A stretch of DNA of 64,000 nucleotides, taken from positions 62,001-126,000 of IMG/VR virus record IMGVR_UViG_3300027770_001980; one strand, written 5' to 3'. Positions 2,427-17,999 of the stretch are shown in pieces; the stretch's first letter is position 1, and each line of letters starts with the position of its first letter. The notes below the pieces were generated by a model that saw nothing but the letters and a program-made list of their open reading frames with translations, did no database searches and was not told the DNA's origin. A program made the translations under genes and the position numbers.

Positions 2427-2923
2427 AGATAGTTAAATTTCCCGACGCTATACTACGTAAGAGTATGCCAGCATTTGATTTCAATAATCCCGTCATGGAT
2501 CCAGTCAAACTTGAAACAGACATGATTGACGCTATGCTGGCATTAGATGGTATAGGTCTTGCTGCTAATCAAGTGGGTATTGAAACCCGTGTGTTTGTTA
2601 TGGGACACAGAGATAATCCAGACGCAGCACAGGCATTCTTCAATCCGGTTGTTACTGATAATACAGAAGATATTGCCGATATGGAGGAAGGCTGCTTGAG
2701 TTTTCCTGGAATCTATGTTAAAGTTAAGAGACCTACAAAAATCAAAGCACGTTGGCAGAACAGCCAGGGTGAATTTGAGGAAGGTGAGTTTGATGGATAT
2801 AACTGTAAGTGCTTCTTACACGAATACGACCATCTTGAAGGAATCGTGTTCCAAGATAGAGTTAGCACTCTGAAATGGGCCATGGCAGTAAAGAAAACTA
2901 AACAAAAGAGAAAACACAAATAA
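2423..2923 (+). CDS. def: Peptide deformylase
   Basis: All three PDF motifs: GIGLAANQ, EGCLS, HEYDH. Confidence 0.95.
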   Translation: MKIVKFPDAILRKSMPAFDFNNPVMDPVKLETDMIDAMLALDGIGLAANQVGIETRVFVMGHRDNPDAAQAFFNPVVTDNTEDIADMEEGCLSFPGIYVKVKRPTKIKARWQNSQGEFEEGEFDGYNCKCFLHEYDHLEGIVFQDRVSTLKWAMAVKKTKQKRKHK

Positions 2924-5205
2924 TGCTACAACCAAATAAAGACCTCGAAGATATTTTTGAATCAGCCGTTGGATATGCTAACGAGCATCGTCATGAATAC
3001 CTTACATTGGAACACTTCTTATATGGTATGGTGAAGAACGAACAGTTTGCAAAACTATTGACAAACTTTGGTGCTAAAGTAGATACGATAATCTCCGATC
3101 TTGAAACATTCATTAATGAAAATTTAAAAGAAATCGTCAACGATAGCGTAGATCGTCCTAAGAAAACTGCCACTGTTGATCGTATGCTACATCGTGCATA
3201 CAATACAGCATTATTCTCCGGAAGAAAAATAATTGAACCTGTGGACTGCTTTATCAGCATTTTCGCAGAGAAGAAAAGTCATGCATGTTACTTCGTAAGA
3301 AAAGCCAATATTGATAAAGACAAATTTATTAGTTATGTGCAGAAAGAGCAAGTAGAAGATGTTGAGGAAGAAGGTGAAAAACCGGTCAATCCTCAAGTTG
3401 AACGTATGCTTAATCAATTCTGTGTCAATCTATCTGCTCGTGCTAAAGGTAAGAAGATTGATCCTGTTATTGGGCGCGAGAAAGAACTCGAAGAAGTTGA
3501 ATTAGTATTGGCCCGTAGAAATAAATCTAACGTGATGCTGATTGGTGATCCGGGTGTGGGTAAGACTGCTATTGCTGAAGGACTTGCACGTAAGATACAC
3601 GAAGGTGCTGTTCCTAAATTCATCCAAGAACATACTGTTTACAGTCTCGATATTAGTGCATTGTTAGCAGGCAGCAAGTATCGTGGAGACTTTGAAGAAC
3701 GTCTTAAAATGGTAATTGGTGCTCTCGAGAAGAAAAAGAACTGTATCTTGTTCATTGATGAGGCACATATGATGAGTGGTGCTGGTGCCAGTAGTGGTGG
3801 CAGTAATGATATGGCCAATATGCTTAAACCAGCATTGAGCAAGGGCACTATCAAAGTGGTAGCCAGCACAACATGGGAAGAATATCGCAAGCACTTTGAA
3901 AAGGATCGTGCTCTAATGCGTAGATTCCAACGTGTTACTGTTGATGAGCCAAATGAAGCAACCTGTATTAAGATCCTTAAAGGACTTAAGAAGTATTACG
4001 AGAAACATCACGGTGTTAAGATCACCAACCAAGCAATCACCGATGCTGTAACTTACTCTGTCAAGTATATGACTGATAAGAAACTGCCGGACAAGGCCAT
4101 CGATCTTATCGATTGTGCCAGTGCTCGCTTCAAGATCAAAGATGAGGAAAACGGTGTAGTGGATCACGATGAGATCATGTTTGAAGTGGCTAAGATCGCT
4201 AATCTTCCACTGGAACAGATCAATGCCAAAGAAGGTAGCAATCTTGCAGGACTCGAAAAAGGCATGCGTGGTAAAGTGTTCGGACAAGAGAAAGCGATCG
4301 AAACATTGCTGGACAAGATCTTTATTGCACAGGCAGGACTAAAAGCATTCAATAAACCCGTTGGTAGTTTCTTGTTTGTTGGCCCAACTGGTGTAGGTAA
4401 GACAGAAGTTGCTAAACAACTGGCTTCTAACATGGGAATCAAACTAATACGCTTTGATATGAGTGAATTCCAAGAGAAACACAGCGTGGCCAAGTTCATC
4501 GGTGCACCTCCTGGATATGTAGGCTTTGAAGATAACGCAGGACAACTGATCACTAACCTACAAGAAACACCAAACTGTGTGCTATTGTTAGATGAAGTTG
4601 AAAAAGCACATCCTGATGTTCTAACAGTCATGCTACAGTTGATGGACAATGGCTTTATCACCGGCAGCAATGGCAAGAAAGCAGACGGACGCAACGCTAT
4701 TATCATCATGACCAGTAACTTGGGTGCTGCTGATGCTGAAAAGAACGGTGTTGGATTTGGTAGTTTAGATCGCGATAGTGATCCTAAGGATGCTGTCAAC
4801 AAGTTCTTTGCACCTGAATTCCGCAATCGTTTAGATGGTATCATCAAGTTTGGTAAGTTGGATCAAACCAGCATGACTAAAGTGGTTAAGAAGTTTGTTG
4901 ATGATCTGAACGCATTGATCAAAGATAAGAATGTCAGTATTAAACCCAATGCAGAGGCTATTGAGTATCTGATCAAGAAAGGATTTGATAGCAAGATGGG
5001 TGCAAGACCACTACAGCGTACCATTGATGAATACATCAAGAAGCCATTGAGCAAGGAAATCTTGTTTGGCAAGTTGACTAACGGTGGAGTAGTTGAGATA
5101 TCTGTTGAGAAAGATCAACTAAAACTCAATGTGATTGAAGTATTGCCAGTTGAACGAGTTAAGGTAGTGGACAAAGATGCAGATACAGAAACTATCGTCC
5201 AGTAA
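2923..5205 (+). CDS. clpA: ATP-dependent Clp protease ATP-binding subunit (ClpA-like, two AAA+ domains)
   Basis: Clp N-domain (HEYLTLEH); Walker A GDPGVGKT and GPTGVGKT; FIDEAH and LLDEVEKAH Walker B; no ClpB middle domain. Confidence 0.93.
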   Translation: MLQPNKDLEDIFESAVGYANEHRHEYLTLEHFLYGMVKNEQFAKLLTNFGAKVDTIISDLETFINENLKEIVNDSVDRPKKTATVDRMLHRAYNTALFSGRKIIEPVDCFISIFAEKKSHACYFVRKANIDKDKFISYVQKEQVEDVEEEGEKPVNPQVERMLNQFCVNLSARAKGKKIDPVIGREKELEEVELVLARRNKSNVMLIGDPGVGKTAIAEGLARKIHEGAVPKFIQEHTVYSLDISALLAGSKYRGDFEERLKMVIGALEKKKNCILFIDEAHMMSGAGASSGGSNDMANMLKPALSKGTIKVVASTTWEEYRKHFEKDRALMRRFQRVTVDEPNEATCIKILKGLKKYYEKHHGVKITNQAITDAVTYSVKYMTDKKLPDKAIDLIDCASARFKIKDEENGVVDHDEIMFEVAKIANLPLEQINAKEGSNLAGLEKGMRGKVFGQEKAIETLLDKIFIAQAGLKAFNKPVGSFLFVGPTGVGKTEVAKQLASNMGIKLIRFDMSEFQEKHSVAKFIGAPPGYVGFEDNAGQLITNLQETPNCVLLLDEVEKAHPDVLTVMLQLMDNGFITGSNGKKADGRNAIIIMTSNLGAADAEKNGVGFGSLDRDSDPKDAVNKFFAPEFRNRLDGIIKFGKLDQTSMTKVVKKFVDDLNALIKDKNVSIKPNAEAIEYLIKKGFDSKMGARPLQRTIDEYIKKPLSKEILFGKLTNGGVVEISVEKDQLKLNVIEVLPVERVKVVDKDADTETIVQ

Positions 5206-5879: not shown

Positions 5880-6320
5880 ATGCCAGCATTAAGTCAATCC
5901 CTAACATTTAAAATCAATAACAGTGACACCGTATCTGTAAGTTATCCGAATACGGGTACCACAGCACTAATTTACACCAGCGAACGCATCAAGGGGGATG
6001 GGTATTTCGGTGGTAGCGACGGTGTTCATACCGTATTCTGGAGCGTGGCCGAGTTTGTAGGTACCATTGAAATACAAGGTACCTTAGCATCCGAGCCGGG
6101 TGATTCTGACTGGACCAGTGTAAGACTCACCGAACCTGGCACTAAATTCTATATTGACACCACTGGGTTAGTTACAGATGCAGGTGTTGATAGCACTCGA
6201 TATGTGTTTGAGACCACCGCTAACAAATCTTATAATTTCACTGGAAATTTTGTCTGGCTACGCGGTCGTATCAGTGAATTTGAGCAAGGTGTGATGAATG
6301 GCATCAGTATAAACAGGTAA
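5880..6320 (+). CDS. Hypothetical virion-associated protein
   Basis: 146-aa beta-rich ORF downstream of the putative late promoter; KGDGYFG motif. Confidence 0.55.
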   Translation: MPALSQSLTFKINNSDTVSVSYPNTGTTALIYTSERIKGDGYFGGSDGVHTVFWSVAEFVGTIEIQGTLASEPGDSDWTSVRLTEPGTKFYIDTTGLVTDAGVDSTRYVFETTANKSYNFTGNFVWLRGRISEFEQGVMNGISINR

Positions 6321-7881: not shown

Positions 7882-8241
7882 ATGAAACTTACAGAATTCT
7901 TTAATCAGCCTATACAAATAAGCAAACGCGGTCAAGACACCGAGGATGACAAGCGTGCCGACGAACTCTTCTGGTACATCATCGACCACGATAAACTACA
8001 CAAAGATTACTTCCACTCTATCGCTCGCAAAGTAAAAAAGATGAAAGAATTCACTCCCGAGCAAGTGTCGGAAATGTATATGCCTATGGTGATCAAAGGT
8101 TGTAAAGAATACTATCACGAAAAAGAATTAAAAGGCAAGTTAGGTAAGGAATTTCCTCAAGAAATGAGAGATGACATGTGCCATAGACTGCATGATCACT
8201 ATCGCGAAGATATTGAAAAAGATATATACAAGTTAGGATAA
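7882..8241 (+). CDS. Hypothetical protein with CTS-like N-terminus (MKLTEF)
   Basis: 119-aa ORF; N-terminal motif shared with four neighbouring genes. Confidence 0.7.
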   Translation: MKLTEFFNQPIQISKRGQDTEDDKRADELFWYIIDHDKLHKDYFHSIARKVKKMKEFTPEQVSEMYMPMVIKGCKEYYHEKELKGKLGKEFPQEMRDDMCHRLHDHYREDIEKDIYKLG

Positions 8242-8245
8242 CGCT

Positions 8246-11200
8246 GTGAACTTAACCGAACTATTTAGAAATCCTAAATTAGCCATCAACGAAGGTGGCA
8301 ATGTATCTAATCAAAGTCCAGGGTGGCAAGGAGTTCCGGGAGATCATCAGGCACAGGAACTTGATCTGCATGTCCATGATCGCGCCTATGTGCAAGATGT
8401 AGTAAGCCAACTATTACATACTATTAACGATGTATATGCTCAACAGCATCAAGAACCATTATGGCATGAGAATTCCGTAAAAACTCAAAAGTTCTTGAGT
8501 GGTAGCACTTTACAATTCATGGATAAGAATATTCCAGATGAAGAATTCATTCGTGTTAAACCTAAAGTAGGCGATATTGATACACAGGCGTCTGACCAAC
8601 ATGCTGATACAATCAAACAGTTCTTACAAAGCAATACAGGCAAGGCGTTTGGCAATGCCGTATTGTTAGGATTCACCCCGGGTAATAGTCAATGGGTTAG
8701 TCTATGGGAGATCAAATTAAAAGATCTACCTGTCAAGATACAGATCGACTTTGAATATGGAGCACATGAGAAGGAAACAGGATTACCTACAGAGTGGCAA
8801 TCATATAGTCATAGTAGTGCATGGGATGATATATCTCAAAACATCAAAGGTGTATTCCACAAATATTTAGATCGTGCATTGCCATACGCACAGGCCAGTA
8901 CCAAGTATGTGGCCCGTGTATTAAAGAAAAGCACCAAGATCTCCGATGCACCTGTTACAGATAGTGATTATAGTTTCGCTGTCAGTGGACCAGGCGGCGG
9001 TGGTGTTAGTCAGAAGTATGTGCCTTACAATGATCCTGCCACTGGGCAACCTATGGAGAAAGATGGAATTCCTGTCATGCAATTACTGGAACCCAGTGCA
9101 AGACAGTATGTTCAAAATCTCTCCCAACAATTTGAAATCTTCTTTGGACGCAAACCCAAAGGTAATGACCAAGAACTTAAAAACAGTTTCATTGGAACCA
9201 TACAACTAATCGCAAAATATTTAGATGAACAGAAGAAAGAAGAAATAGCAAGACGCTTCTTCAGCATATGTTTTGAACCAGGTAGTCAAATGATTACTCG
9301 TGGTGATCCGGCAAGAGATCGTGATATAAAATTTGCGGCTATCGATTGGATGTTGGAAAATATGAAGTTGGCTAATGCTGCTGGTTTGAGAAAAGAAGCA
9401 ATCGATATGGCCACTGCTTATGCTGCCGCTTTCCAAAATAAGGCCGCTAAACCAGTTAATGAAGAAGCACAGGTAAAAGCACAATTCCGTAAAGGTATGC
9501 CACACTTGCACGATCTTAAGCCTGCTGACTTGTTAGATCTATTAGACGAAATTCATGACGGAAACGGCAGATTTAAACTACAAAACATTCCTTTAAACGT
9601 CAAAGTAGACGGATTTGGTGGCAGATTTGGTAAGAATTCCGACGGTAAGCCTTTCATGGGCACCAGTAGAACAGAACCCAGATATGAACCAGGCTTCGTA
9701 GCGTATCATCAAAAGAAAGGCACCGTTGATCCGGAAATTTTAAACCGTGCTCAATTGTTTGATGACCTATTTGAGGAAATGATGAACGCTGTCCAATTAG
9801 TTGATAGCAAGTTAGGACCTGGATTTTTGGTCAACAAACAAGTCACATGTGAAGTATTGTATCTACCATTTGCTACAGAAACTCCAGAAGGTAAACTAAA
9901 GTTTGTTGGTATACATTATGACAAATTACCATCAGGTGTCAATCTTGCATTAGTTCCATTCCGTATCACAGATGCTACCACAGGTGAAGATTTACCTAAC
10001 TCAAACAAAATCGTCCAAGAATTAACCAGCGTAGGGCAGTCAGGTAGTGTCATGTTTATTGACAACAGCCTAACACAGAATGAAGCATTAGATGTTACAG
10101 CATTAGTTCCACCATTGGAAAACATTGAACAACTCAAAGGCATGTTGGCCAGCAACAAGTTAGAAGCCCGACGTCAAGTCAAGGCAGCATTGGAGCCAGT
10201 GGCAGCGGCATTAGAGAAGGCCATCATCGAAGATCCTAACATCATCGGTAAAGATTTATTAGGACAAGACTATGAAGGTATCGTTATCAACAGCCGCCTT
10301 GGTCCTATCAAAGTAACCAGTCAAGAACAGCGTGATGTTATCACTGCTAAAAATGCTGCTAAGACTAATGCAAGAACAGAGCGTCCAAGAGGCGAGGCTA
10401 AAACCGCAGTAGTTGCCATTGGTAGTTTCGTTGGACACATCGGCCACGAACAACTTTGGGACTATACAACTAAGAAAGCAGCAGCAGTAGGAGGTGATCC
10501 ATATTTGTTTATTGGCAATGCACAGGGCAAGGATGATCCTATTCCACCATCAGTTAAAGTTCAAACATGGCACAAACTGTATCCAGAATATGCTAAAAAT
10601 ATATCCACGGTGAATCAAGATGGCGGATCACTGCTACAAAAGATCAAACACGAATTAATCAATCCACTACCAGGCAAGCCTCCACGCTATGATAATGTCA
10701 TCATCATGGTAGGTGAAGATCAAGCAGGTCTCACTATGCCTCAAGCATTGATGAAGGCTGTTAACAAGTTCCAGGGTTACGAACATGTAAAAGTTACATT
10801 AGAACCGACACCGCGTGGTACAGGCATGAGTTTCACTCGACTACGCAACATCTTAAAAGATCCCAAGGCAACTCCAGATCAACAATTTGCTGAATGGTCT
10901 AAAGGGTTTGATGTGAGCAAATTAGGTGCAGACTGGATCTTACACCTTATGGATATAACAAGGAAAGGTATGGGAATACAACAACCACAGGCACCTGTTC
11001 CGCAGGCACAACCTACACCGTTAGCAGAACGCAGAGTATTAAATGCTCTAATCGAAGGTACCAGTATTGACAGCACACTACGAGCCATCATCAATGATGT
11101 TGGTGAACCTATTACCAATGTCTATGGCACGATGAAATTCCAAGCCAAGAAGTATATGGAAAATCACGGCGAACTCGGCCGTGGCTTTAGAATGGTAGCA

Positions 11201-13219
11201 GCAGGTGTTGGTGGTCGTTGGGTTCAAAATATGTATGTAGGTAGACTACAGAATGAACTATACGATCTATGCAAATACAATACTCGTAGAACTGTAGATC
11301 TACAAGAATTCCTACGCGGAGTCGAAACTGACGGTGAGTTAGAAATGAAGAGATCATTTGGCAACATCGCTAATAATCTACCTCCAATATTGGCCAAGTT
11401 AGGCGAACAAATCAACGCACCACAACTAACAAGAAATGCTCAGCGTTGGATGCAGAACAAAGCAGAATACGAACGATATCTAATGGATCTGGAAGCAGCA
11501 GGCGATGAGCCGGATGATATTCCTGTTAGAAGCAAGCCTCCAAAGAGTAATGCTGTCGGGCAACAGAATGCACAGGTTGATTCAATCATCAACAATGTGT
11601 TAGGTAAAGTTCCTAAAAGTATAGCAGGTGATATCCGTAATGCTATCGCTCGTGCTCCAAACAAATTGGCAGCATTGAAAGCGGAGTTAGATCGTCACAA
11701 TATCAATATGGCAGAAGACAATGATGTTATGTCACGCATGGCTCGAGATCTAACTGGTCCAGGTGCTCCTGATGCGAAACGCAGAGCCCAACGCGATCAA
11801 CAGCGTCAGCAGGATCGTGCTCAAAGTGATGGCAGAGATCATGGCCCTAAATGGGATGTAGAGGAAGGCGAACAAGATCCACAGTCAGAATTAAAACTGA
11901 TTAACCAAAAACTCAAAGATGCGTATAAACAAGTTCGTAACAATTCTTCTGTGTCAATAGGTTGGTACATGTCAGAGGTAAAAGCATTAAAAGCACGCCG
12001 CGAAGAATTGATTAAACAATTAAGACAAGGTGTGGCGGAGGCCGGTAGTCCTGCTCAACAGGCAGCAATAGCCATTTCTATGAAGAAAGCAGGAAAGAAA
12101 CCAAAAAGTGAAGATATCTCATTAAACGAACTATCAGGATACGGCGGTGATAAAAAATATGAGCACTTAGGCACTCATAAAAGATATGAGGTTTATGTCA
12201 CTAAACAAAAATTTAATAATTTATACTTTATTGCAATTGCCGAGAATACAAGAACGTTAGAGTCAAAATTTAAAGCAAAAGGTAACACTCCACAAGAAGC
12301 AGTGAATAATTTAAAATTAGAAATTGATAAAGAAATCGATGTTGCTACCAAAGTCAGTGGACAGGCTATATTAGATTTTAATGTTGATTTTGTAAAAGAT
12401 ATATTAGAAATGAGTTCCGATACATTCTACGCTAAAATAGTAGCGGGGCCAAGATTAGTTATAGCAGGACCTGAAATGATGGAATATCCTGAAATAATGC
12501 GTGATGAAGGATTTAAGCCAAGTGCTATTAGAACATATAAGGGTGGCGAGGGGACTACAAAACTTCCAGGAGTTCCGCTAAGTTCTAAATCAGCAGCGTC
12601 CGCAAATCTTATTGCCAATGGTAGATATGTGTTAGGAAATGAAGAACTCGATAAAGACGGCAATAGAGTATTTGAGTTAAACTTTGATAGTGTGGTACAG
12701 GCGTCAAACGATAAAATGAGACTAAGGGCACCTGCTCTTACTGTAGGAACCAATAGATCTCAAGGTGTGTCAGAGGCTCCTAAAAGTGCTGCGGTTAGAT
12801 TAGGCAATGCTATCAAGCGTGTGCAAGGTACAACAGCAGCAAGCCAAGCAAGATCTGTTATCCCTTCAAGTATCCCTAAACCAGAACCCAAGAAGGATGA
12901 GAAAACTAATGAGAGAATGATGCCAGCCAGTATGTTCGCAGGCAGCAAAAAGAACAAACTCGGACCAGCAGGACAATGGAAGAACACCGGACCTAAAAAG
13001 AACAAACCAGCACAGGCCGGTGATTTAGTTGGCGGTATGGAGGAAAGTTTAAAAGATTCCAACCCTTGCTGGAAAGGCTATCACCCTGTGGGTACCAAGA
13101 AAAAGTCAGGTAAAACTGTTCCAAACTGTGTACCAGTGAGCGAGAATGTTGAAAACATTATGGATGCTCTGATTAACAAGATCGTAGTAAATGAAGCAAT
13201 TCAGAATAACCGTAAATGA
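8246..13219 (+). CDS. 1657-aa modular polyprotein: Pol-beta-like NTase, ligase-like KxDG domain, HIGH-motif nucleotidyltransferase and several small modules
   Basis: GTG start MNLTEL; SGS...GDID (8498-8581); NVKVDG (9602-9613) and later YEGIVI; HIGH (10436-10447) with GED and R..GMSFTRLR; C-terminal CWKGY...GKTVPNCVP module. Confidence 0.65.
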   Translation: MNLTELFRNPKLAINEGGNVSNQSPGWQGVPGDHQAQELDLHVHDRAYVQDVVSQLLHTINDVYAQQHQEPLWHENSVKTQKFLSGSTLQFMDKNIPDEEFIRVKPKVGDIDTQASDQHADTIKQFLQSNTGKAFGNAVLLGFTPGNSQWVSLWEIKLKDLPVKIQIDFEYGAHEKETGLPTEWQSYSHSSAWDDISQNIKGVFHKYLDRALPYAQASTKYVARVLKKSTKISDAPVTDSDYSFAVSGPGGGGVSQKYVPYNDPATGQPMEKDGIPVMQLLEPSARQYVQNLSQQFEIFFGRKPKGNDQELKNSFIGTIQLIAKYLDEQKKEEIARRFFSICFEPGSQMITRGDPARDRDIKFAAIDWMLENMKLANAAGLRKEAIDMATAYAAAFQNKAAKPVNEEAQVKAQFRKGMPHLHDLKPADLLDLLDEIHDGNGRFKLQNIPLNVKVDGFGGRFGKNSDGKPFMGTSRTEPRYEPGFVAYHQKKGTVDPEILNRAQLFDDLFEEMMNAVQLVDSKLGPGFLVNKQVTCEVLYLPFATETPEGKLKFVGIHYDKLPSGVNLALVPFRITDATTGEDLPNSNKIVQELTSVGQSGSVMFIDNSLTQNEALDVTALVPPLENIEQLKGMLASNKLEARRQVKAALEPVAAALEKAIIEDPNIIGKDLLGQDYEGIVINSRLGPIKVTSQEQRDVITAKNAAKTNARTERPRGEAKTAVVAIGSFVGHIGHEQLWDYTTKKAAAVGGDPYLFIGNAQGKDDPIPPSVKVQTWHKLYPEYAKNISTVNQDGGSLLQKIKHELINPLPGKPPRYDNVIIMVGEDQAGLTMPQALMKAVNKFQGYEHVKVTLEPTPRGTGMSFTRLRNILKDPKATPDQQFAEWSKGFDVSKLGADWILHLMDITRKGMGIQQPQAPVPQAQPTPLAERRVLNALIEGTSIDSTLRAIINDVGEPITNVYGTMKFQAKKYMENHGELGRGFRMVAAGVGGRWVQNMYVGRLQNELYDLCKYNTRRTVDLQEFLRGVETDGELEMKRSFGNIANNLPPILAKLGEQINAPQLTRNAQRWMQNKAEYERYLMDLEAAGDEPDDIPVRSKPPKSNAVGQQNAQVDSIINNVLGKVPKSIAGDIRNAIARAPNKLAALKAELDRHNINMAEDNDVMSRMARDLTGPGAPDAKRRAQRDQQRQQDRAQSDGRDHGPKWDVEEGEQDPQSELKLINQKLKDAYKQVRNNSSVSIGWYMSEVKALKARREELIKQLRQGVAEAGSPAQQAAIAISMKKAGKKPKSEDISLNELSGYGGDKKYEHLGTHKRYEVYVTKQKFNNLYFIAIAENTRTLESKFKAKGNTPQEAVNNLKLEIDKEIDVATKVSGQAILDFNVDFVKDILEMSSDTFYAKIVAGPRLVIAGPEMMEYPEIMRDEGFKPSAIRTYKGGEGTTKLPGVPLSSKSAASANLIANGRYVLGNEELDKDGNRVFELNFDSVVQASNDKMRLRAPALTVGTNRSQGVSEAPKSAAVRLGNAIKRVQGTTAASQARSVIPSSIPKPEPKKDEKTNERMMPASMFAGSKKNKLGPAGQWKNTGPKKNKPAQAGDLVGGMEESLKDSNPCWKGYHPVGTKKKSGKTVPNCVPVSENVENIMDALINKIVVNEAIQNNRK
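12026..12040 (+). repeat. Recurrent module-junction motif CAAGGTGTGGCGGAG (QGVAE)
   Basis: First 14 nt identical to 14839-14852; related copies at 12761-12775 (CAAGGTGTGTCAGAG) and 15148-15162 (AGAGGTGTGGAGGAA). Confidence 0.7.
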
Positions 13220-13451
13220 TATTCCGCAAAGTAGTGAAGATGACTGCTACTTGTCTCCAGAAGATCCTATACACGAACTAAAAGCCACATCTATCATGGG
13301 TGGATTGGGTGGGCAAGAACGGCTGGCAGCATACAAGGCCACATTGAGACAGCCTGTTGTAGGCAGCAATAAAGGGCAGATACAACGAGAGCAGAACATC
13401 AAACCCGGAACTGAGGAATGGTTCGAACTTTGGTTTGGTCGTAATAAATAA
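13191..13451 (+). CDS. Hypothetical protein
   Basis: 86-aa ORF overlapping the previous stop; ends IKPGTEEWFELWF. Confidence 0.65.
   Translation: MKQFRITVNDIPQSSEDDCYLSPEDPIHELKATSIMGGLGGQERLAAYKATLRQPVVGSNKGQIQREQNIKPGTEEWFELWFGRNK
13444..13450 (+). promoter_or_regulatory. Putative late promoter core (ATAAATA)
   Basis: ATAAATA 7 nt before the Dps ATG. Confidence 0.5.
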
Positions 13452-13457
13452 CATATC

Positions 13458-13898
13458 ATGGAACAATTAACACAAATCGCCAAGGTTGCTTTTGCCAGTG
13501 AATTCAGTTTCGCACTAAAAGCACAGAATTTCCACTGGAATGTAGAAGGTAGTGACTTCTTGGAATATCATCAATTGTTTGAAATGATATACAGCGAAGT
13601 ATACGGCAGCATTGATGACTTTGCTGAAAATCTACGCAAGTTAGGAACTTATGCTCCTGCCAGTTTATCACGATTCAACATGTTAACACAGGTTGGCGAT
13701 GAAACTGAAATACTACCATTAGAGGCCATGGTGAAAGAATTATTGATGGATAATGAGAAGATGATACTTATCCTGAAGAAAACATATGCTGCCAGTGAAG
13801 CAGCAGGTGAGCCTGGATTTAGTAACTTCTTGGCAGATCGCATTGATGGTCATCGCAAGCATGGTTGGATGTTGCGTGCCAGTAGCCGAGGTCAATAA
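13458..13898 (+). CDS. dps: Dps / ferritin-like DNA-protection protein
   Basis: FHWNVEGSDFLEYHQLFE, DDFAENLRKLG and HRKHGWML match Dps ferroxidase-centre motifs. Confidence 0.9.
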   Translation: MEQLTQIAKVAFASEFSFALKAQNFHWNVEGSDFLEYHQLFEMIYSEVYGSIDDFAENLRKLGTYAPASLSRFNMLTQVGDETEILPLEAMVKELLMDNEKMILILKKTYAASEAAGEPGFSNFLADRIDGHRKHGWMLRASSRGQ

Positions 13899-14263
13899 TG
13901 CGGGCACTTGAATTTATTACCGAAAAGAAAAATGGTAAACTTTCCAAGAGACAACAGCAACCCACAAGAGGTGCTAATGTCTACAGCGACGGTGAACAAG
14001 TAAGTGGTGATTATACCTCTTACAGGTTAGGTATGGCAGTAGCAGGGGCAGACGGCAAGACTCCGGTGAAAATAGATTCAAAAAGTTGGGTTGGCAAAAA
14101 GAAAACTACACATCCTTATTCAGAGGTAGAACAAGATATGTTAAAAGATGCCTACAAAGCAGTAGGTGCAAAATATACCGACCTTAACCACGGCGATATG
14201 ACCAGCAAAGAGTTAGAAGGAACAAACACAGTAAGTCCTGTAGCAAATTGGAATAAACAATGA
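13898..14263 (+). CDS. Hypothetical protein with CTS-like N-terminus (MRALEFITE)
   Basis: TAATG-coupled to dps; N-terminus resembles T4 internal-protein CTS MKTYQEFIAE. Confidence 0.7.
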   Translation: MRALEFITEKKNGKLSKRQQQPTRGANVYSDGEQVSGDYTSYRLGMAVAGADGKTPVKIDSKSWVGKKKTTHPYSEVEQDMLKDAYKAVGAKYTDLNHGDMTSKELEGTNTVSPVANWNKQ

Positions 14264-16017
14264 ACAACGAATTTAAACAAATATCAAAAGGCGATATAAC
14301 TCGTTATGTATTAGAAAGTGGCAGCAGCGGTGGCACCAGTTCGGGAAGTGTTGCCAGTGTCAGTATGCCCATAGGCGGTACACGCAAGCGAGGTGCTAAT
14401 CTAATCGCACAAGAAGCAGATAAGAAAACAGTTCCAGCAACTACTCCAAGAAACTTCGTTGCCAAAAATGCCAAATCAAGTGGTGCCGGTGCTCACAAAG
14501 ATAAAAAGAAAGCAGCCAAGCAAGGTCAAGAAAAACATAAGAAACCTTTTATGGAAGACCATAGTACCGCCTCAGGCGGATGGGGTAAAGGCAGCTACGA
14601 TACATATACCGCAGGCAATCATGGACGCGGAGTTGCTGAAGATGAAAGAGACCACCCTGATCATGAAATACAAATGGCCAGTAGTGAACTACTAAGTATT
14701 GCCAAGAATGCTGAAGAATTGTTAGGCTTAGTACGTCGCTATAGCGAACAGGAAGGGCTTGATGCTTGGCAACAAAGTAAAATTACCAAAGCAGCCGACT
14801 ATTTGAATAGTGTGCTACAAAGCGTCAACGGTGAACAGCAAGGTGTGGCGGAAGGCTCTGAAACATCACAACAGCAACAAGTTCGTGCTGCAATTACTAA
14901 AGGCATGGAAAAATGGGATAGTAATAATAAGTCTACATATCAGAGTCAACCAACTAAAACTAATTATATGCCACCCAGCGGTTACGCTAGCGATTCATTG
15001 ACAGGAGTAGATTCCATTGATCCTGATGGTACCGTGGTCATATCTCTTGGAAATACTGGTGCCGAAGCCACAATTAAAAAATTAGCAACATTAGGTGGTA
15101 TGCCCGGCATTAAAACTAGACAACTGCAATCACCAACCGTTTCATCTAGAGGTGTGGAGGAAGGTGAGGGAAAACGCTGTATGCAATGTGGCATGACTAA
15201 CTGTACATGCCCACCGGGTAAATGCAAATGCAAACCCGTTGCAGGATGGATCCCAAACAAGGGATTTAAGAAAGATGTAGACGAAAGTTGGGATGATATT
15301 AAAAAGTTTGGCAAGAAGGCCGCAGTTGCAGGTGCTATAGGACTCGGCATTGGTGCCGCACATGCCGGCGGATGGTCACCCTCCGATGTTCCAGCAGGCG
15401 GACATAATCAACTGCCGGACATCGTTGCCCATGTTAAGTTTAAAGTGGGTGACAAGGAAGTTAGCAAAGAGATCAATTTAGGATCACACTATCGCTCACC
15501 AGGTGAGGCAGGTAAAGAACTTGAGAACTTTTTAAAGTCTAAAGGGATAAAATTCTACGAATATAGTCTTGAAAGAGTTAAACCAAAGGACGACGATAAG
15601 ATGGATAGTTCCCCTGCTACCGGCGATATGAAAGGTAGCATGGATACTAAAGAACCTGCTGCTACTGGCCCATCTACAGACAACTATATGGCCAAAGATA
15701 ACGATCCAGAACACGGACCGTCAATGGGCGGAAAGTTTGTTAAAGAAGGTGCAAAGGTCGATCGTCAGGCCAAGCATATTACTGCCAGTATGATGAAGAA
15801 AGGCAAGAGCAAGAAAGATGCAGAATCTATTGCTTGGGCACATATCAAACATCCTAAGAACGAAAGCGCAGATCCATACTTTGAATCACTACAATCTATG
15901 GTTGAGAGACAACTGGAACCTAACATGGAATTAGATACATGGATTGATAATTTCCAACATGCTGATCCAAATAAGTATCACCAATTTAAAAATAAGACCC
16001 CAGAAAAAAAAAAGTAA
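14260..16017 (+). CDS. Modular low-complexity polyprotein with repeated Glu-terminated junctions (GVAE/GVEE/VDE/VKE)
   Basis: 585-aa ORF of short Lys/Gly-rich modules; contains a six-Cys module and an internal signal-peptide-like segment; possible -1 extension to 16070. Confidence 0.65.
   Translation: MNNEFKQISKGDITRYVLESGSSGGTSSGSVASVSMPIGGTRKRGANLIAQEADKKTVPATTPRNFVAKNAKSSGAGAHKDKKKAAKQGQEKHKKPFMEDHSTASGGWGKGSYDTYTAGNHGRGVAEDERDHPDHEIQMASSELLSIAKNAEELLGLVRRYSEQEGLDAWQQSKITKAADYLNSVLQSVNGEQQGVAEGSETSQQQQVRAAITKGMEKWDSNNKSTYQSQPTKTNYMPPSGYASDSLTGVDSIDPDGTVVISLGNTGAEATIKKLATLGGMPGIKTRQLQSPTVSSRGVEEGEGKRCMQCGMTNCTCPPGKCKCKPVAGWIPNKGFKKDVDESWDDIKKFGKKAAVAGAIGLGIGAAHAGGWSPSDVPAGGHNQLPDIVAHVKFKVGDKEVSKEINLGSHYRSPGEAGKELENFLKSKGIKFYEYSLERVKPKDDDKMDSSPATGDMKGSMDTKEPAATGPSTDNYMAKDNDPEHGPSMGGKFVKEGAKVDRQAKHITASMMKKGKSKKDAESIAWAHIKHPKNESADPYFESLQSMVERQLEPNMELDTWIDNFQHADPNKYHQFKNKTPEKKK
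14839..14853 (+). repeat. Recurrent module-junction motif CAAGGTGTGGCGGAA (QGVAE)
   Basis: 14-nt exact match to 12026-12039 in a different gene. Confidence 0.7.
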
Positions 16018-16066: not shown

Positions 16067-16849
16067 ATGAGACTAGATGAGTTTGATCAAGAAGACTACG
16101 AGATACGCAATCTAAAGAAGTTAGATGGTATCTTGGTCACACTCTGCAAATTGGTCATTGAAGGCCAAAAGAGAGATAAAGAACGCTATGGTATGGTCGC
16201 TGCCGCTGTATTAGATCCTGACAATAATTTGGTCATGGGATTAAATTATATGCAAGGCGATTTACATGTCCACGCTGAAAAAGCGGCCATGGAAGCCTAC
16301 GATAGAAAATACGGAGATATTCCAGAAGGCAGTATTCTTCTTACTACATTGAGTCCTTGCAGTGAATTCAGTGACGAAACTGCACAAGAAAGACACGGGG
16401 ATAGTTGTACCGATCTAATTAATAATTCCATCATACGAAAAGTCTATTGCGGGTTTATGGATCCAAGCCAAGGTGATGACGAGCACGAAGAAAGAGAATT
16501 CACTCTACAAGAAACTAACAATACCAATATTAGAACATTATGTGAAAAGTTTGCTGATACATTCTTGGAAGATGAGTTGAATGAATCTGCTGCTTGGCAT
16601 CGTAAGGCAGGTAAGAATAAAACAGGTGGGCTCAATCGTAAAGGCGTTATGAGTTATCGTAGAGAGCACCCTGGCAGTAAACTACAAACCGCAGTAACCA
16701 CTAAACCCAGTAAATTGAAACCGGGTAGCAAGGCTGCTAAACGCCGTAAATCATTCTGTGCTAGAATGGGCGGCGTTGATGGTCCTATGAAAAAAGATAA
16801 CGGTGAGCCCACACGGAAAGCATTGGCACTAAGAAAGTGGAACTGCTAA
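16067..16849 (+). CDS. Zn-dependent cytidine/RibD-type deaminase domain fused to a basic C-terminal phage module
   Basis: MRLDEF N-terminus; HVHAE and TTLSPC...C deaminase motifs; after LNE a basic module (AAWHRKAGKN...RRKSFCARM...WNC) like DUF6321 of T4-like phages. Confidence 0.7.
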   Translation: MRLDEFDQEDYEIRNLKKLDGILVTLCKLVIEGQKRDKERYGMVAAAVLDPDNNLVMGLNYMQGDLHVHAEKAAMEAYDRKYGDIPEGSILLTTLSPCSEFSDETAQERHGDSCTDLINNSIIRKVYCGFMDPSQGDDEHEEREFTLQETNNTNIRTLCEKFADTFLEDELNESAAWHRKAGKNKTGGLNRKGVMSYRREHPGSKLQTAVTTKPSKLKPGSKAAKRRKSFCARMGGVDGPMKKDNGEPTRKALALRKWNC

Positions 16850-17457
16850 TGCGTATCAATGAACTACTTGAAAGTGCAGGTGATTTACCAAGCGATCCCG
16901 GTCCTAGAGAATTTATTAGTAATAAATTTCATGTTAAATTTACCAACGATGCTCTTTTAGTTTACGATGGCGGTGAACTTGTTTATAAAAGGCCAGGAAA
17001 TTTCTCAAACCCAACTAGGCAAAATGCGTCAAATGCAAAAGGTGTCACTAATACCCTGTGGAGGGCTAAACACGATCCAGCATATAAAAATCTAGCCAGT
17101 TCTCCTTACTTGGTTATAAAACCAAGTGACGTTCATAAAGCAGCCGACAAAAAAGGTATACCGTGGGATAAAGATAGGAAATTTTTTAATTTATCAAAAA
17201 AACTAACAGGTAAAGGTCATTTAGATAACATGACCCCAGAAGAACTTAGAATAATGTTTGATTACTTAACTAAGATAAAAGTTAGAGAAAACTTTGCTGA
17301 CGGTCGGCATCCTGAGGATAAGGGCGACTCAAAGCGTTATCATGTTCCTACCAAAGGTAGTGTCAGTAGTTTGAGAAAGTTTGCTAAAAATCATTCAGGT
17401 CGGGCAGCACAATTGGCACACTGGGCTGCCAATATGAAAGCAGGTAAAAAGAAATAA
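16849..17457 (+). CDS. Hypothetical modular protein with CTS-like N-terminus (MRINEL)
   Basis: Start refined to the ATG overlapping the previous TAA (TAATG at 16847-16851); C-terminal module begins VRE-NFADG. Confidence 0.65.
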   Translation: MRINELLESAGDLPSDPGPREFISNKFHVKFTNDALLVYDGGELVYKRPGNFSNPTRQNASNAKGVTNTLWRAKHDPAYKNLASSPYLVIKPSDVHKAADKKGIPWDKDRKFFNLSKKLTGKGHLDNMTPEELRIMFDYLTKIKVRENFADGRHPEDKGDSKRYHVPTKGSVSSLRKFAKNHSGRAAQLAHWAANMKAGKKK

Positions 17458-17999
17458 TGTTTAATTTTATAAAATATGTAGTTGAAGGCAAAGAGATCAA
17501 AACACTCGAACAAGTGAAGTTATCCTATGCCCGTGATGCTCTGGAACCTGTACTAAGTGAAGATGCTATAGATTATCATTATGGCAAACTATATAAAACT
17601 TATGTTAATCGCTACAACAATGGCGAAGGTGATCCAGACTTCAACGAAGCCGGTGCATTCTTACACAGTATGTATTTTCCACAATTACAAGTTCCAGACG
17701 AAACCAATGATCCATTCGGTGCATCTAAAGAGTTTATTGATCAACATTGGAAATCATTTGAAAACTTTAAAGAAGAATTTACCAAAGTTGCTATGGCCAT
17801 ACAAGGTAGCGGATGGGTCTATCTTGCTCGTAATGGTGAGATCAAAACCATTGTCAATCACCAAATCAAGAATGATATCATACTGCTGATAGATTGGTGG
17901 GAGCATGCCTTTAATATCGATTATCTTGCAGACAAGAAAGGTTATCTAACTAACCATTGGAAAATCATCAACTGGAATTTAATTAACGAGAGATTATAA
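17457..17999 (+). CDS. sod: Fe/Mn superoxide dismutase (compact)
   Basis: DALEP, YHYGKLYKTY, FLH, QGSGW and DWWEHA; the four metal ligands (H, H, D, H) are present. Confidence 0.88.
   Translation: MFNFIKYVVEGKEIKTLEQVKLSYARDALEPVLSEDAIDYHYGKLYKTYVNRYNNGEGDPDFNEAGAFLHSMYFPQLQVPDETNDPFGASKEFIDQHWKSFENFKEEFTKVAMAIQGSGWVYLARNGEIKTIVNHQIKNDIILLIDWWEHAFNIDYLADKKGYLTNHWKIINWNLINERL

What the first reader, a model, noticed from the sequence alone, without database searches (positions are those of the whole stretch)
12026..15162. DNA-level conserved junction motif (C/A)(A/G)AGGTGTG(G/T)(C/A)(G/A)GA(A/G): possible cassette insertion or recombination site
Seen: four junctions use the same GGT-GTG codons: 12026 CAAGGTGTGGCGGAG, 14839 CAAGGTGTGGCGGAA (14 nt identical, in two different genes), 12761 CAAGGTGTGTCAGAG and 15148 AGAGGTGTGGAGGAA. 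A fifth GVAE at 14626 uses different codons (GGA GTT GCT GAA). GTG and GCG are G-ending codons in a genome that mostly prefers A/T-ending codons. The segments ending in these motifs (about 12110-12760 and 14854-15147) look like self-contained inserts. Inference: the motif is a DNA element that seeds in-frame acquisition or shuffling of protein cassettes while also encoding the protease site, i.e. an integron-like, protein-level cassette array.
Basis: partly seen in the sequence, partly recalled or inferred. Interest (0 to 1): 0.75.

Follow-up and report, generated by a model that had tools for sequence, protein, structure and literature searches.

The report
In-frame cassette adapter in jumbo phages
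A conserved 18-19-base DNA "adapter", always read as the peptide QGVAE-G, separates small protein modules inside long genes of freshwater jumbo phages and marks exactly where those modules are swapped between genes and between phages.

Summary
The four motif copies sit at the stated coordinates (expected 0.01 by dinucleotide shuffling, 0.09 by codon shuffling). In 54 distinct QGVAE-type sites from the window and 33 related IMG/VR loci the codons are GGT 52/54, GTG 44/54 (background 13%) and GCG 42/51 (background 7%). The preceding codon is NAG whatever the residue. The exact 17-mer occurs in more than 120 viral contigs, and its 11-base core is in frame on the coding strand in 266 of 267 cases.

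Homology between phages starts and stops at the motif. Cassette B (14854-15147) is 99.1% identical to a cassette in phages whose other genes are 69-84% identical. Of 189 homology breakpoints, 49% fall on a motif against 4.9% expected. Strains in other lakes lack or replace both window cassettes, with breaks at the motifs.

Best explanation: polyprotein-like arrays of small cassettes, joined by an adapter that is both a short homology for in-frame recombination and, by inference, a Glu-specific (T4 gp21-type) cleavage site.

The integron reading fails on three counts: no integrase or resolvase was found, the motif forms no hairpin, and the cassettes have no start or stop of their own. This is a new variant of motif-bounded module exchange (CdiA VENN, T4 gp38 glycine-rich motifs). 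Cleavage and the recombination enzyme are untested.

The parts
8246..13219 (+). Polyprotein-like gene P0001 (1657 aa). A large conserved N-terminal part (aa 1-1160, including a cytidylyltransferase-like stretch) is followed by junction, cassette A, junction and a C-terminal module.
   Evidence: ORF and translation. PHROG domain hits. The orthologue in L002/L030 is 74% identical over aa 1-1160 and 83% over the C-terminal module, with a different module in between.
12026..12040 (+). Junction J1, CAA GGT GTG GCG GAG (QGVAE). It carries the canonical 11-mer GGTGTGGCGGA.
   Evidence: Contigs from sample X4 follow the window up to 12039 and then continue into unrelated sequence.
12041..12760 (+). 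Cassette A (aa 1266-1505). It consists of a basic mini-module, AGSPAQQAAIAISMKKAGKKPK, followed by a folded domain of about 215 aa of unknown function.
   Evidence: It occurs elsewhere as stand-alone proteins of about 220 aa that end where J2 sits here. AlphaFold2 mean pLDDT is 80.7, and Foldseek finds no match in PDB or AFDB. Contig depth is zero over 12116-12731 in X4 and over 12116-12577 in X7 while the flanks are covered. L002 carries a different 80-aa module at this place.
12761..12775 (+). Junction J2, CAA GGT GTG TCA GAG (QGVSE), a partly diverged copy of the adapter.
   Evidence: Homology to L002/L030 resumes exactly here: window aa 1509 aligns with L002 aa 1426.
12776..13219 (+). C-terminal module of P0001. 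It is basic and contains the CWKGYHPVGTKKKSGKTVPNCVP motif, a terminal module shared by many arrays.
   Evidence: PHROG 9737, 4359 and 727 hits. Homologues sit at the C-termini of many junction-bearing ORFs.
14260..16017 (+). Polyprotein-like gene P0002 (585 aa), with three QGVAE-type sites and one decayed site.
14626..14640 (+). Drifted site, CGC GGA GTT GCT GAA (RGVAE). The peptide is kept while the nucleotides are not canonical.
   Evidence: The homologous HGRGVAE sites in L011, L016, L032, L055 and L102 also use ordinary codons. A strain indel, 14557-14646, ends 6 nt after this site.
14839..14853 (+). Junction J3, CAA GGT GTG GCG GAA (QGVAE). With the following GG it is the exact canonical 17-mer.
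   Evidence: It is the left edge of the 99% identity block shared with L003, L004 and L005. Contigs in X2 and X4 have loose ends at 14837 and 14856.
14854..15147 (+). Cassette B (aa 199-296), a small module of unknown function.
   Evidence: The block 14837-15164 (328 bp) is 99.1% identical to L003/L004/L005, where its neighbouring modules are unrelated. Contig depth is zero in X4 over 14888-15041. Homologues exist as leader + QGVAE + cassette proteins (P0033).
15148..15162 (+). Junction J4, AGA GGT GTG GAG GAA (RGVEE).
   Evidence: It is the right edge of the 99% identity block.
15733..15750 (+). Decayed junction, AAG TTT GTT AAA GAA GGT (KFVKEG). It is positionally homologous to a canonical EQGVAEG junction in L023 and keeps V-x-E-G.
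   Evidence: Sequence. Window V494-K-E-G aligns with L023 V365-A-E-G. HSPs to L001 and L023 break at 15745-15747.

Best explanation
P0001 and P0002 belong to a widespread class of polyprotein-like array genes in uncultured freshwater jumbo phages. In these genes, independently folding modules (median 78 aa) are strung together in one reading frame. The modules are separated by a nearly invariant adapter of 18-19 nt, (N)AG CAA GGT GTG GCG GAA G(G), always read as (x)QGVAE|G.

Shown:
- The adapter is conserved as nucleotides, not only as peptide.
- Homology tracts between genes, phages and samples begin and end on it.
- Because it always sits in the same frame, any exchange between two copies keeps the reading frame.

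Inferred:
- The adapter serves as a short homology at which the phage's general recombination or replication machinery (a UvsX/RecA-like protein is encoded) exchanges, deletes and inserts cassettes during co-infection.
- Repeated exchange, and the preferential spread of cassettes with intact adapters, keeps the nucleotides canonical. Junctions that stop moving drift synonymously (HGRGVAE) or decay (KFVKEG).
- The peptide V-A-E|G is a cleavage site for a Glu-specific maturation protease of the T4 gp21 type.
- The array is therefore delivered as one precursor, possibly targeted to the prohead by a T4-CTS-like N-terminal leader, and then cut into many small proteins. This would resemble T4 internal proteins and Alt, plausibly a fast-evolving host-takeover or counter-defence arsenal.
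For: Nucleotide-level constraint:
- In 54 distinct sites recruited by protein similarity, not by the motif, codons are GGT 52/54 (background 0.43), GTG 44/54 (0.13) and GCG 42/51 (0.07). Binomial p values range from 4e-17 to 5e-40.
- The codon before CAA is GAG 16 to GAA 0 for Glu, CAG 8 to CAA 3 for Gln and AAG 4 to AAA 1 for Lys, so 'AG' is kept while the residue varies. The codon after the motif varies freely.
- The exact 17-mer occurs in more than 120 IMG/VR stretches.
- 266 of 267 copies of the 11-base core lie in the G-V-A-E frame of a long ORF, and information content is confined to about positions -5 to +14.
- Five contigs of 260-343 kb each carry 4-6 copies, against 0-1 for the reversed control.
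- Among 60 cassette-homologue pairs with saturated four-fold sites and a junction at the same edge, both keep the exact 11-mer in 42.

Recombination junction:
- Window 14837-15164 is 99.1% identical to L003/L004/L005, whereas other shared genes are 69-84% identical, and identity collapses at both motifs.
- 93 of 189 internal homology breakpoints lie on a motif, against a 4.9% null.
- The L002 orthologues replace the modules between junctions.
- Samples X4 and X7 lack the cassettes, with loose ends at 12039, 14837 and 14856.
- 30-31 of 34 multi-member module families have non-homologous neighbours.

Modules are autonomous:
- Cassette A has stand-alone homologues.
- Its AlphaFold2 model is confident, mean pLDDT 80.7.

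Protease site:
- A Peptidase_S77 prohead protease is encoded in the genome.
- The T4 rule is cleavage after Glu in L/I-X-E, and gp22 is cut at a Glu-Ala bond (PMC9026906).
- This phage's scaffold-like proteins are full of [LI]-A-E.
- Drifted and decayed junctions keep V-x-E.
- The AQQAAIAI mini-module is preceded by [LIV]-x-E|A in 8 of 9 contexts.
- Several proteins are simply leader + QGVAE + cassette: MRINEILVEQGVAEG, MRATEFIIEGVAEG and P0033. The T4 CTS, for comparison, is MKTYQEFIAE (PMC8442874).
- CTS-like N-termini occur in 61% of junction-bearing ORFs against 27% of controls.

Precedent: crossovers within small conserved motifs occur in T-even gp38 (PMC3157838) and between VENN-encoding sequences in cdiA (PMC3150448).
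Against: - No cleavage, virion location or recombination event was observed directly.
- An adapter of 17-19 nt is short for RecA/UvsX-type homologous recombination, so an assisting nuclease or annealase may be needed.
- V at P3 is not the canonical L/I of T4 gp21.
- The array genes sit among replication and auxiliary genes (Dps, SOD, dCMP deaminase, PolB), not in the head module.
- CTS-like N-termini also occur in 27% of control ORFs, including a dCMP deaminase.
- Two large contigs with the same adapter (G003, 99% complete, and G005) have no detectable S77 or S78 protease or related MCP.
- The protease-peptide complex prediction gave no answer.
- Whether the nucleotides are kept by turnover and gene conversion or by direct purifying selection is unresolved. 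Junctions with both flanks vertically inherited and diverged are too rare to test: only 6 pairs.
Confidence: 0.6

Rival explanations
1. A dedicated sequence-specific enzyme recognises the asymmetric 18-19-bp adapter and catalyses or triggers cassette insertion and excision. Candidates are a homing-type HNH or GIY-YIG nuclease, an unrecognised recombinase, or a template-switching activity. This would be a true 'protein-level integron'.
For: The conserved tract of 18-19 bp is in the size range of homing-endonuclease sites and is shorter than efficient RecA-type homology. Its nucleotides are kept across two phage lineages with different local GC content (39% and 48%) and past synonymous saturation. 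The genome encodes six HNH proteins and one GIY-YIG protein.
Against: No tyrosine or serine recombinase was found. None of the nucleases is adjacent to the arrays. The motif has no dyad symmetry and no hairpin. No co-occurrence analysis was possible. Drifted junctions also bound indels.
Confidence: 0.2
2. The nucleotides are conserved for an RNA- or translation-level function, such as ribosome pausing at rare GUG and GCG codons or at an anti-Shine-Dalgarno-like AGGUG to let each module fold or be cut co-translationally, or an RNA-processing site. Recombination at the adapter would then be only a by-product of the identical sequence.
For: The motif is always on the coding strand and in one frame. 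It contains two rare codons and AGGUG, which is complementary to the 3' end of 16S rRNA (established knowledge).
Against: Pausing needs rarity, not an invariant 18-nt string that includes the common codons CAA, GGT and GAA. There is no flanking or structural conservation. There is no start codon at a usable distance for internal initiation (sequence). The window encodes no tRNA genes. The sharp breakpoints show that the DNA is used in exchange whatever else it does.
Confidence: 0.07
3. The adapter is a recombination junction and flexible linker but is not cleaved. The arrays would then act as intact multidomain ('polyvalent') proteins.
For: No protease domain was found within the arrays. Lineage G003/G005 lacks a detectable S77 or S78 protease. 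The polyvalent proteins of phages are often delivered unprocessed (PMC5512222).
Against: The peptide is conserved even where the DNA has drifted: HGRGVAE, FVKEG and [LIV]xE|A before the AQQAAIAI module. A linker after a 9-17-aa N-terminal leader has no obvious use. The match to the Glu-specific rule of the encoded protease also argues for cleavage.
Confidence: 0.25
4. The pattern is an artefact: chance plus codon bias, or chimeric metagenome assembly at a short repeat.
For: All the data are metagenomic assemblies, and repeats can mis-join contigs.
Against: Shuffled nulls give 0.01-0.09 against 4 observed. The repeat is shorter than usual assembly k-mers. Identical arrays were assembled from three different metagenomes (L003, L004, L005). 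Independent contigs from X2, X3 and X7 span junctions J2, J3 and J4 of the window.
Confidence: 0.02

Closest known systems
CdiA-CT/CdiI (and Rhs) polymorphic toxin modules bounded by VENN-encoding sequence
   Same: A short conserved peptide-encoding DNA tract demarcates variable modules. Near-identical modules in different genomes have homology that begins at one motif copy and ends at the next: 99% over 1048 nt in E. coli (PMC3150448). That is the pattern seen here. Recombination between motif copies reloads modules in frame.
   Different: In CdiA one variable C-terminal tip sits on a huge conserved protein and spare 'orphans' lie downstream as separate fragments with immunity genes. Here up to 6-7 cassettes sit in tandem inside one ORF, with no immunity genes and no DUF638 or RHS domains. 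The hosts here are phages, and the motif is proposed to be cut by a maturation protease.
T-even internal proteins with capsid targeting sequence (CTS, MKTYQEFIAE), processed by gp21
   Same: Both are diverse small proteins sharing only a short conserved leader that ends in a [LI]-x-E cleavage site. They are replaced by unrelated CTS-bearing proteins among relatives (PMC3012670, PMC9026906, PMC8442874). This genome has a gp21-family protease, and many array proteins start M[KR]xxEF[IV]xE.
   Different: The T4 internal proteins are separate genes with one N-terminal site each. Here many cassettes are fused in one ORF with internal repeats of the site, and the site's nucleotides are conserved across very distant phages. 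Packaging was not shown here.
gp38 adhesin glycine-rich motifs (GRMs) of T-even phages
   Same: Small conserved in-frame motifs separate hypervariable segments, and crossovers within the motifs swap segments (PMC3157838).
   Different: The GRMs are structural core elements of a single domain. Here the adapters separate autonomous domains of unrelated families and are probably removed or cut.
Integron gene-cassette arrays
   Same: Both are arrays of exchangeable units bounded by a repeated site, drawing on a large and diverse pool: 173 module families among 215 internal modules.
   Different: There is no IntI, no attC hairpin, and the cassettes are not complete ORFs.
Polyvalent proteins of phages and conjugative elements (Iyer et al. 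2017)
   Same: Both are long multidomain proteins that combine many unrelated modules with extensive mosaicism, predicted to be delivered with the DNA and sometimes processed (PMC5512222).
   Different: None of their signature domains was detected. No conserved inter-domain nucleotide adapter was found in the passages of that paper that were read.

Membership tests
Integron | IntI-type tyrosine recombinase encoded with the array | tested here: not met
   PF00589 gives no match in the 221-kb record, while the control genomes all match. PF00239 also gives none. Caveat: the record is about 62% complete.
Integron | attC sites: imperfect inverted repeats that fold as hairpins | tested here: not met
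   Conservation is confined to about 19 nt with no dyad symmetry. Folding 75 nt of DNA around the four junctions gives z-scores from -0.16 to +2.28.
Integron | Cassettes are complete promoterless ORFs | tested here: not met
   The cassettes are in-frame segments of one ORF without their own start or stop.
Integron | Exchangeable units bounded by a repeated site | tested here: met
T4-type capsid-targeted internal proteins | gp21-family (Peptidase_S77) prohead protease in the genome | tested here: met
   PF03420 matches at G000:147577-148005 with E 2.5e-26. phrog_207 matches with E 7e-58, next to the portal, scaffold-like and major capsid protein genes. It is not found in G003 or G005.
T4-type capsid-targeted internal proteins | Cleavage motif L/I-X-E, cut after Glu | tested here: inconclusive
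   The junction is V-A-E|G, with Val rather than Leu or Ile at P3. Scaffold-like proteins of the same phage carry many [LI]-A-E. The rule is taken from PMC9026906.
T4-type capsid-targeted internal proteins | Short N-terminal capsid targeting sequence ending at a cleavage site | tested here: inconclusive
   61% of junction-bearing ORFs start M.{1,4}[ED][FLMI] and 62% have [LIV]xE in the first 16 aa, against 27% and 29% of controls. Some have the leader directly fused to QGVAE. It is not specific, because it is also seen on a dCMP deaminase.
T4-type capsid-targeted internal proteins | Protein present in virions in processed form | not testable with these tools
   No isolate and no proteome are available. 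The complex prediction gave no answer.
Polymorphic toxin loci (CdiA VENN / Rhs) | Homology between modules begins and ends at DNA encoding a conserved peptide motif | tested here: met
   The comparison pattern is in PMC3150448.
Polymorphic toxin loci (CdiA VENN / Rhs) | CdiA (DUF638) or RHS-repeat scaffold with toxin-immunity pairs | tested here: not met
   Pfam finds no such domains in P0001, P0002 or their modules. No small immunity-like ORFs follow the cassettes.
Polyvalent proteins | Phage protein of 2-15 unrelated domains with mosaic evolution | tested here: met
Polyvalent proteins | Signature domains (MPTase peptidase, ART, ParB-like, PBECR and others) | tested here: not met
   Pfam and PHROG scans of all modules give none.
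Viral polyprotein with its own protease | Protease domain inside the polyprotein | tested here: not met
   Pfam and PHROG detect no peptidase family in P0001 or P0002. Most modules have no annotation, so an unrecognised protease cannot be excluded.

The most novel reading that the evidence does not exclude
The adapter is the recognition site of a dedicated, still unidentified enzyme system shared by at least two unrelated lineages of freshwater jumbo phages. That system would insert, excise and trade in-frame protein cassettes: a genuine 'integron for protein modules' that feeds a common pool of small injected effectors. The same 18-19 nt would be selected simultaneously as an enzyme site and as a protease site.
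Probability: 0.2. Interest if true: 0.92.

Novelty: new variant of a known kind. Interest (0 to 1): 0.78.

Why it matters
If the reading is right, these phages have a standard in-frame "plug" that lets any small protein module be moved between genes and between distantly related phages without breaking the reading frame, and then be released by proteolysis. That would be a compact way of evolving a host-takeover or counter-defence arsenal.

It extends the motif-bounded module exchange known from bacterial polymorphic toxins and T-even adhesins to tandem multi-cassette arrays.

It also has practical use. Searching metagenomes for one 17-mer retrieves hundreds of discrete, pre-delimited candidate effector modules: 215 internal modules in 173 families from only about 150 loci.

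The case further shows synonymous sites held fixed across phages whose other synonymous sites are saturated, which bears on how recombination signals can be embedded in coding sequence.

Tried and rejected
- Chance or codon bias: rejected.
- Assembly chimera: rejected, because independent samples span the junctions and three metagenomes give identical arrays.
- attC-like hairpin: rejected.
- Tyrosine or serine recombinase: none found.
- Internal translation start at the motif: rejected, because no start codon lies at a usable spacing (sequence).
- Shared promoter or late-promoter motif upstream of array genes: nothing enriched except a conserved upstream gene end.
- tRNA genes for the rare codons: none in the window.
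- Cultured-phage relatives: megablast finds none, and tblastn finds only distant hits to the N-terminal domain of P0001 in Campylobacter, Vibrio and Xanthomonas phages.
- Function of the cassettes: Pfam, PHROGs, ESM Atlas and Foldseek (PDB, AFDB clusters) gave nothing usable.
- Protease-junction peptide docking: no answer, and not counted as evidence either way.
- Synonymous test on vertically inherited junctions: only 6 usable pairs, so inconclusive.
- Literature: no paper combines GVAE with phage, and none combines prohead protease, polyprotein and shuffling. Repoila et al. 1994 could not be read, so it is cited only through reviews.
- Prokaryote genomes: the 21-mer occurs 9 times in 596 Gb. 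The low-GC hits look like phage contigs binned into MAGs and the high-GC hits look like chance.
Full report
**Setting.** The window is bases 62001-126000 of a single 221,356-bp IMG/VR viral record with 39% GC. CheckV estimates it to be 62% complete. Outside the window it carries a T4-type head module: portal, Peptidase_S77 prohead protease, a scaffold-like protein and a gp23-like major capsid protein. It also encodes a UvsX/RecA-like protein. The window itself holds PolB, a dCMP deaminase fused to DUF6321, Dps/ferritin, Fe/Mn superoxide dismutase, peptide deformylase, a ClpA/B-like AAA+ protein and, on the minus strand, tail genes. The sequence is found in lake, river and other freshwater metagenomes. 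It has no close cultured relative.

The degenerate 15-mer occurs four times, at 12026, 12761, 14839 and 15148. Dinucleotide shuffles expect 0.01, and there are no other copies in the genome. Two copies lie in ORF 8246-13219 (P0001, 1657 aa) and two in ORF 14260-16017 (P0002, 585 aa).
- The peptide [QR]GV[ASE]E occurs five times among about 259 ORFs, all in these two proteins.
- GTG is 14% of Val codons and GCG 7% of Ala codons.

**The motif is a general, nucleotide-level feature of a group of phages.** Protein-based searches of IMG/VR with P0002 and the tail of P0001 returned 33 loci. In these loci and the window there are 54 distinct QGVAE-type sites.
- Codons are GGT 52/54 (background in the same ORFs 0.43), GTG 44/54 (0.13), GCG 42/51 (0.07) and CAA 39/40. 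Binomial p values range from 4e-17 to 5e-40.
- The codon before CAA ends in AG whatever it encodes: Glu GAG 16 to GAA 0, Gln CAG 8 to CAA 3, Lys AAG 4 to AAA 1. The codon after GAA nearly always starts with G but is otherwise free.
- So the conserved object is a nucleotide string, (N)AG CAA GGT GTG GCG GAA G(G), of 18-19 nt.
- In those loci, 266 of 267 copies of the 11-mer core lie on the coding strand in the G-V-A-E frame of a long ORF (median 629 aa). Nothing outside about positions -5 to +14 is conserved.
- Five contigs of 260-343 kb carry 4-6 copies each, clustered and on one strand, against 0-1 for the reversed control pattern.
- In 596 Gb of prokaryote genomes a 21-mer version occurs only 9 times. 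The low-GC hits look like phage contigs in MAGs.

**Homology starts and stops on the motif.**
- The ORF L004 5365-7047 (also in L003 and L005, from three metagenomes) has five junctions. It contains the P0002 module 199-296 flanked by unrelated modules.
- At the DNA level, window 14837-15164 matches it at 99.1% over 328 bp. Identity is random to the left of the first motif and to the right of the second.
- Every other segment shared by these phages is 69-84% identical. The cassette therefore moved recently between distant phages.
- In an all-against-all comparison of 177 junction-bearing ORFs, 93 of 189 distinct internal homology breakpoints fall within the motif window, against 4.9% for random positions. 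Left ends pile up at -8 to +3 and right ends at +10 to +16.
- In the closest relative (L002/L030), the P0001 orthologue is 74% identical over aa 1-1160 and 83% over the C-terminal module. It has an 80-aa module where the window has the 245-aa cassette A, and homology resumes exactly at junction 12761. The P0002 orthologue diverges exactly after junction 14839.
- Contigs from four other samples show zero depth over 12116-12731 (X4) and 12116-12577 (X7) and over 14888-15041 (X4) while the flanks are covered. Contigs run into unrelated sequence at 12039, 14837 and 14856.
- Other contigs from X2, X3 and X7 span junctions J2, J3 and J4 as in the window, which argues against assembly chimeras.

**What the cassettes are.** Cutting the ORFs at the junctions gives 215 internal modules. 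Their median length is 78 aa (interquartile range 61-132) and they fall into 173 families. In 30-31 of the 34 families with several members, the neighbours differ between members.
- Cassette A has stand-alone homologues of about 220 aa (P0011, P0015, P0017) that end two or three residues before the place where junction J2 sits in the window.
- Its AlphaFold2 model is confident (mean pLDDT 80.7) with floppy ends. It has no Foldseek match in PDB or AFDB clusters.
- Cassette B homologues include P0033, which is a 17-residue leader, then QGVAE, then the cassette.
- No module has an informative Pfam or PHROG match.

**Peptide-level function.** The peptide is conserved where the DNA is not, in three settings.
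- The HGRGVAE site inside the conserved head of the P0002 family uses ordinary, varying codons in the window and in L011, L016, L032, L055 and L102.
- The window's KFVKEG at 15733-15750 is positionally homologous to a canonical EQGVAEG in L023 and keeps V-x-E-G.
- The common basic mini-module AQQAAIAI..KK..KPK is preceded by [LIV]-x-E|A in 8 of 9 contexts.

T4 gp21 cuts after Glu in L/I-X-E, cuts gp22 at a Glu-Ala bond, and removes the 10-residue capsid targeting sequence MKTYQEFIAE from internal proteins. The internal proteins vary among T4 relatives and keep only that leader. This phage encodes a gp21-family protease, and its scaffold-like proteins are full of [LI]-A-E.

Junction-bearing ORFs start with CTS-like leaders such as MRFTEFISE, MRAQEFITEG and MKLSEIIIEG, some fused directly to the junction (MRATEFIIEGVAEG, MRINEILVEQGVAEG). 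The rate is 61% against 27% in control ORFs. I therefore infer, but have not shown, that QGVAE|G is a maturation-protease site and that at least some arrays are capsid-targeted precursors.

Cautions on this inference:
- Val is not the canonical P3 residue.
- The leader-like pattern is not specific.
- The genes are not in the head module.
- A docking attempt gave no answer.
- Two large contigs with the same arrays and leaders (G003, 99% complete, locally 48% GC; and G005) have no detectable homologue of this major capsid protein or protease, and no S77 or S78 family hit. Either their protease is too diverged to see, as with phiKZ gp175, which also cuts after Glu, or the adapter does not depend on that protease.

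**How the nucleotides are kept.** Among 60 pairs of homologous cassettes whose four-fold sites are saturated (less than 50% identical) and which have a junction at the same edge, both keep the exact 11-mer in 42, one keeps it in 16 and neither in 2. That set is partly ascertained by the motif, but the unbiased set agrees. Two explanations are possible. One is direct purifying selection on the DNA. The other is turnover: junctions are constantly re-created by exchange between canonical copies, cassettes with intact adapters spread, and junctions that stop exchanging drift. I could not separate the two, because junctions with both flanks vertically inherited and diverged are almost absent: 6 pairs. 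That scarcity itself says junctions rarely stay put.

**Mechanism.** The adapter has no dyad symmetry, no flanking conservation and no hairpin potential. The record has no tyrosine or serine recombinase. So this is not an integron in the membership sense.

The simplest mechanism is short-homology recombination or template switching by the phage's own very active machinery during co-infection. This was shown experimentally for crossovers within small conserved motifs of T-even gp38 and proposed for VENN-encoding sequences in cdiA, where homology between orphan modules runs from one VENN sequence precisely to the next.

Because 17-19 nt is short, a nuclease that cuts at or near the adapter remains a live rival. 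Six HNH proteins and one GIY-YIG protein are encoded, none adjacent to the arrays. An RNA- or translation-level role for the string cannot be excluded, but it does not explain an invariant 18-mer made partly of common codons.

**Verdict.** The core of the inference, a DNA element bounding in-frame protein cassettes, is supported by independent lines of evidence. The integron analogy holds only functionally, and the protease role is plausible but untested. I found no description of this adapter in the searchable literature. I rate it a new variant of a known kind: motif-bounded module exchange, here as tandem in-frame arrays in jumbo phages.

Noticed in passing
window 8246-8275, 7882-7911, 16067-16096; many loci (e.g. 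L003 580, L106, L127): Many ORFs of these phages start with a leader resembling the T4 capsid targeting sequence, M-[KRN]-x-x-[ED]-[FLI]-...-[LIV]-x-E. Examples are MNLTELFRN.. (P0001), MKLTEFFNQ (ORF 7882) and MRLDEFDQE (dCMP deaminase). The pattern is enriched in junction-bearing ORFs (61% against 27%) but is not exclusive to them.
   Followed up: partly
window 12041-12106: A basic mini-module, AGSPAQQAAIAISMKKAGKKPK (weak DUF7230/phrog_1359-like family), recurs in 9 of 171 array ORFs. It sits right after a leader or a junction and is preceded by [LIV]-x-E|A in 8 of 9 contexts. It might be a targeting or DNA-binding helix.
   Followed up: partly
G003:C1:172000-184000 (L173) and G005:C1:130500-140500 (L174): A second jumbo-phage lineage (343 kb at 99% complete, and 262 kb) carries the same adapter and leaders. 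It has no detectable homologue of the window's major capsid protein or prohead protease and no S77 or S78 family hit. The adapter therefore crosses phage lineages and GC backgrounds (48% and 42% locally).
   Followed up: partly
window 15733-15750: A decayed junction, KFVKEG (AAG TTT GTT AAA GAA GGT), is positionally homologous to a canonical EQGVAEG in L023. Homology to L001 and L023 breaks here.
   Followed up: yes
window 14557-14646: A 90-nt segment is absent in contigs of samples X2 and X4 and in relatives L001 and L002. Its right edge lies 6 nt after the drifted RGVAE site, so non-canonical sites also bound indels.
   Followed up: partly
window 12904-12915: In samples X2 and X3, 315 nt replace these 12 nt inside the C-terminal module of P0001. 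This strain-level insertion is not at a junction.
   Followed up: no
window 16067-16849: A dCMP deaminase is fused to a very basic C-terminal DUF6321 domain. The same domain ends the five-junction array of L004, and PHROG families pair it with the C-terminal motif of P0001.
   Followed up: no
window 6282-6293 (ORF 5880-6320): A 12-nt partial adapter, GAGCAAGGTGTG (EQGV), lies in frame near the C-terminus of a virion-structural-like protein (phrog_14467). It could be a relic or chance.
   Followed up: no
window 2423-5205, 13458-13898, 17457-17999: An auxiliary gene set surrounds the arrays: peptide deformylase, a two-ring ClpA/B-like AAA+ ATPase (760 aa), a Dps/ferritin-like protein and an Fe/Mn superoxide dismutase.
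   Followed up: partly
window 40000-62000, ORF 43267-58176 (-): A block of lower GC (about 33% against about 40%) on the minus strand holds a 4969-aa ORF and an 1127-aa ORF next to a gp5-like baseplate protein (62072-63871). These are presumably giant tail or fibre proteins.
   Followed up: no
window 12947-13020: A short internal direct repeat (AAAAAGAACAAAC..., encoding KKNKLGPAG / KKNKPAQAG) lies in the basic C-terminal module of P0001.
   Followed up: no
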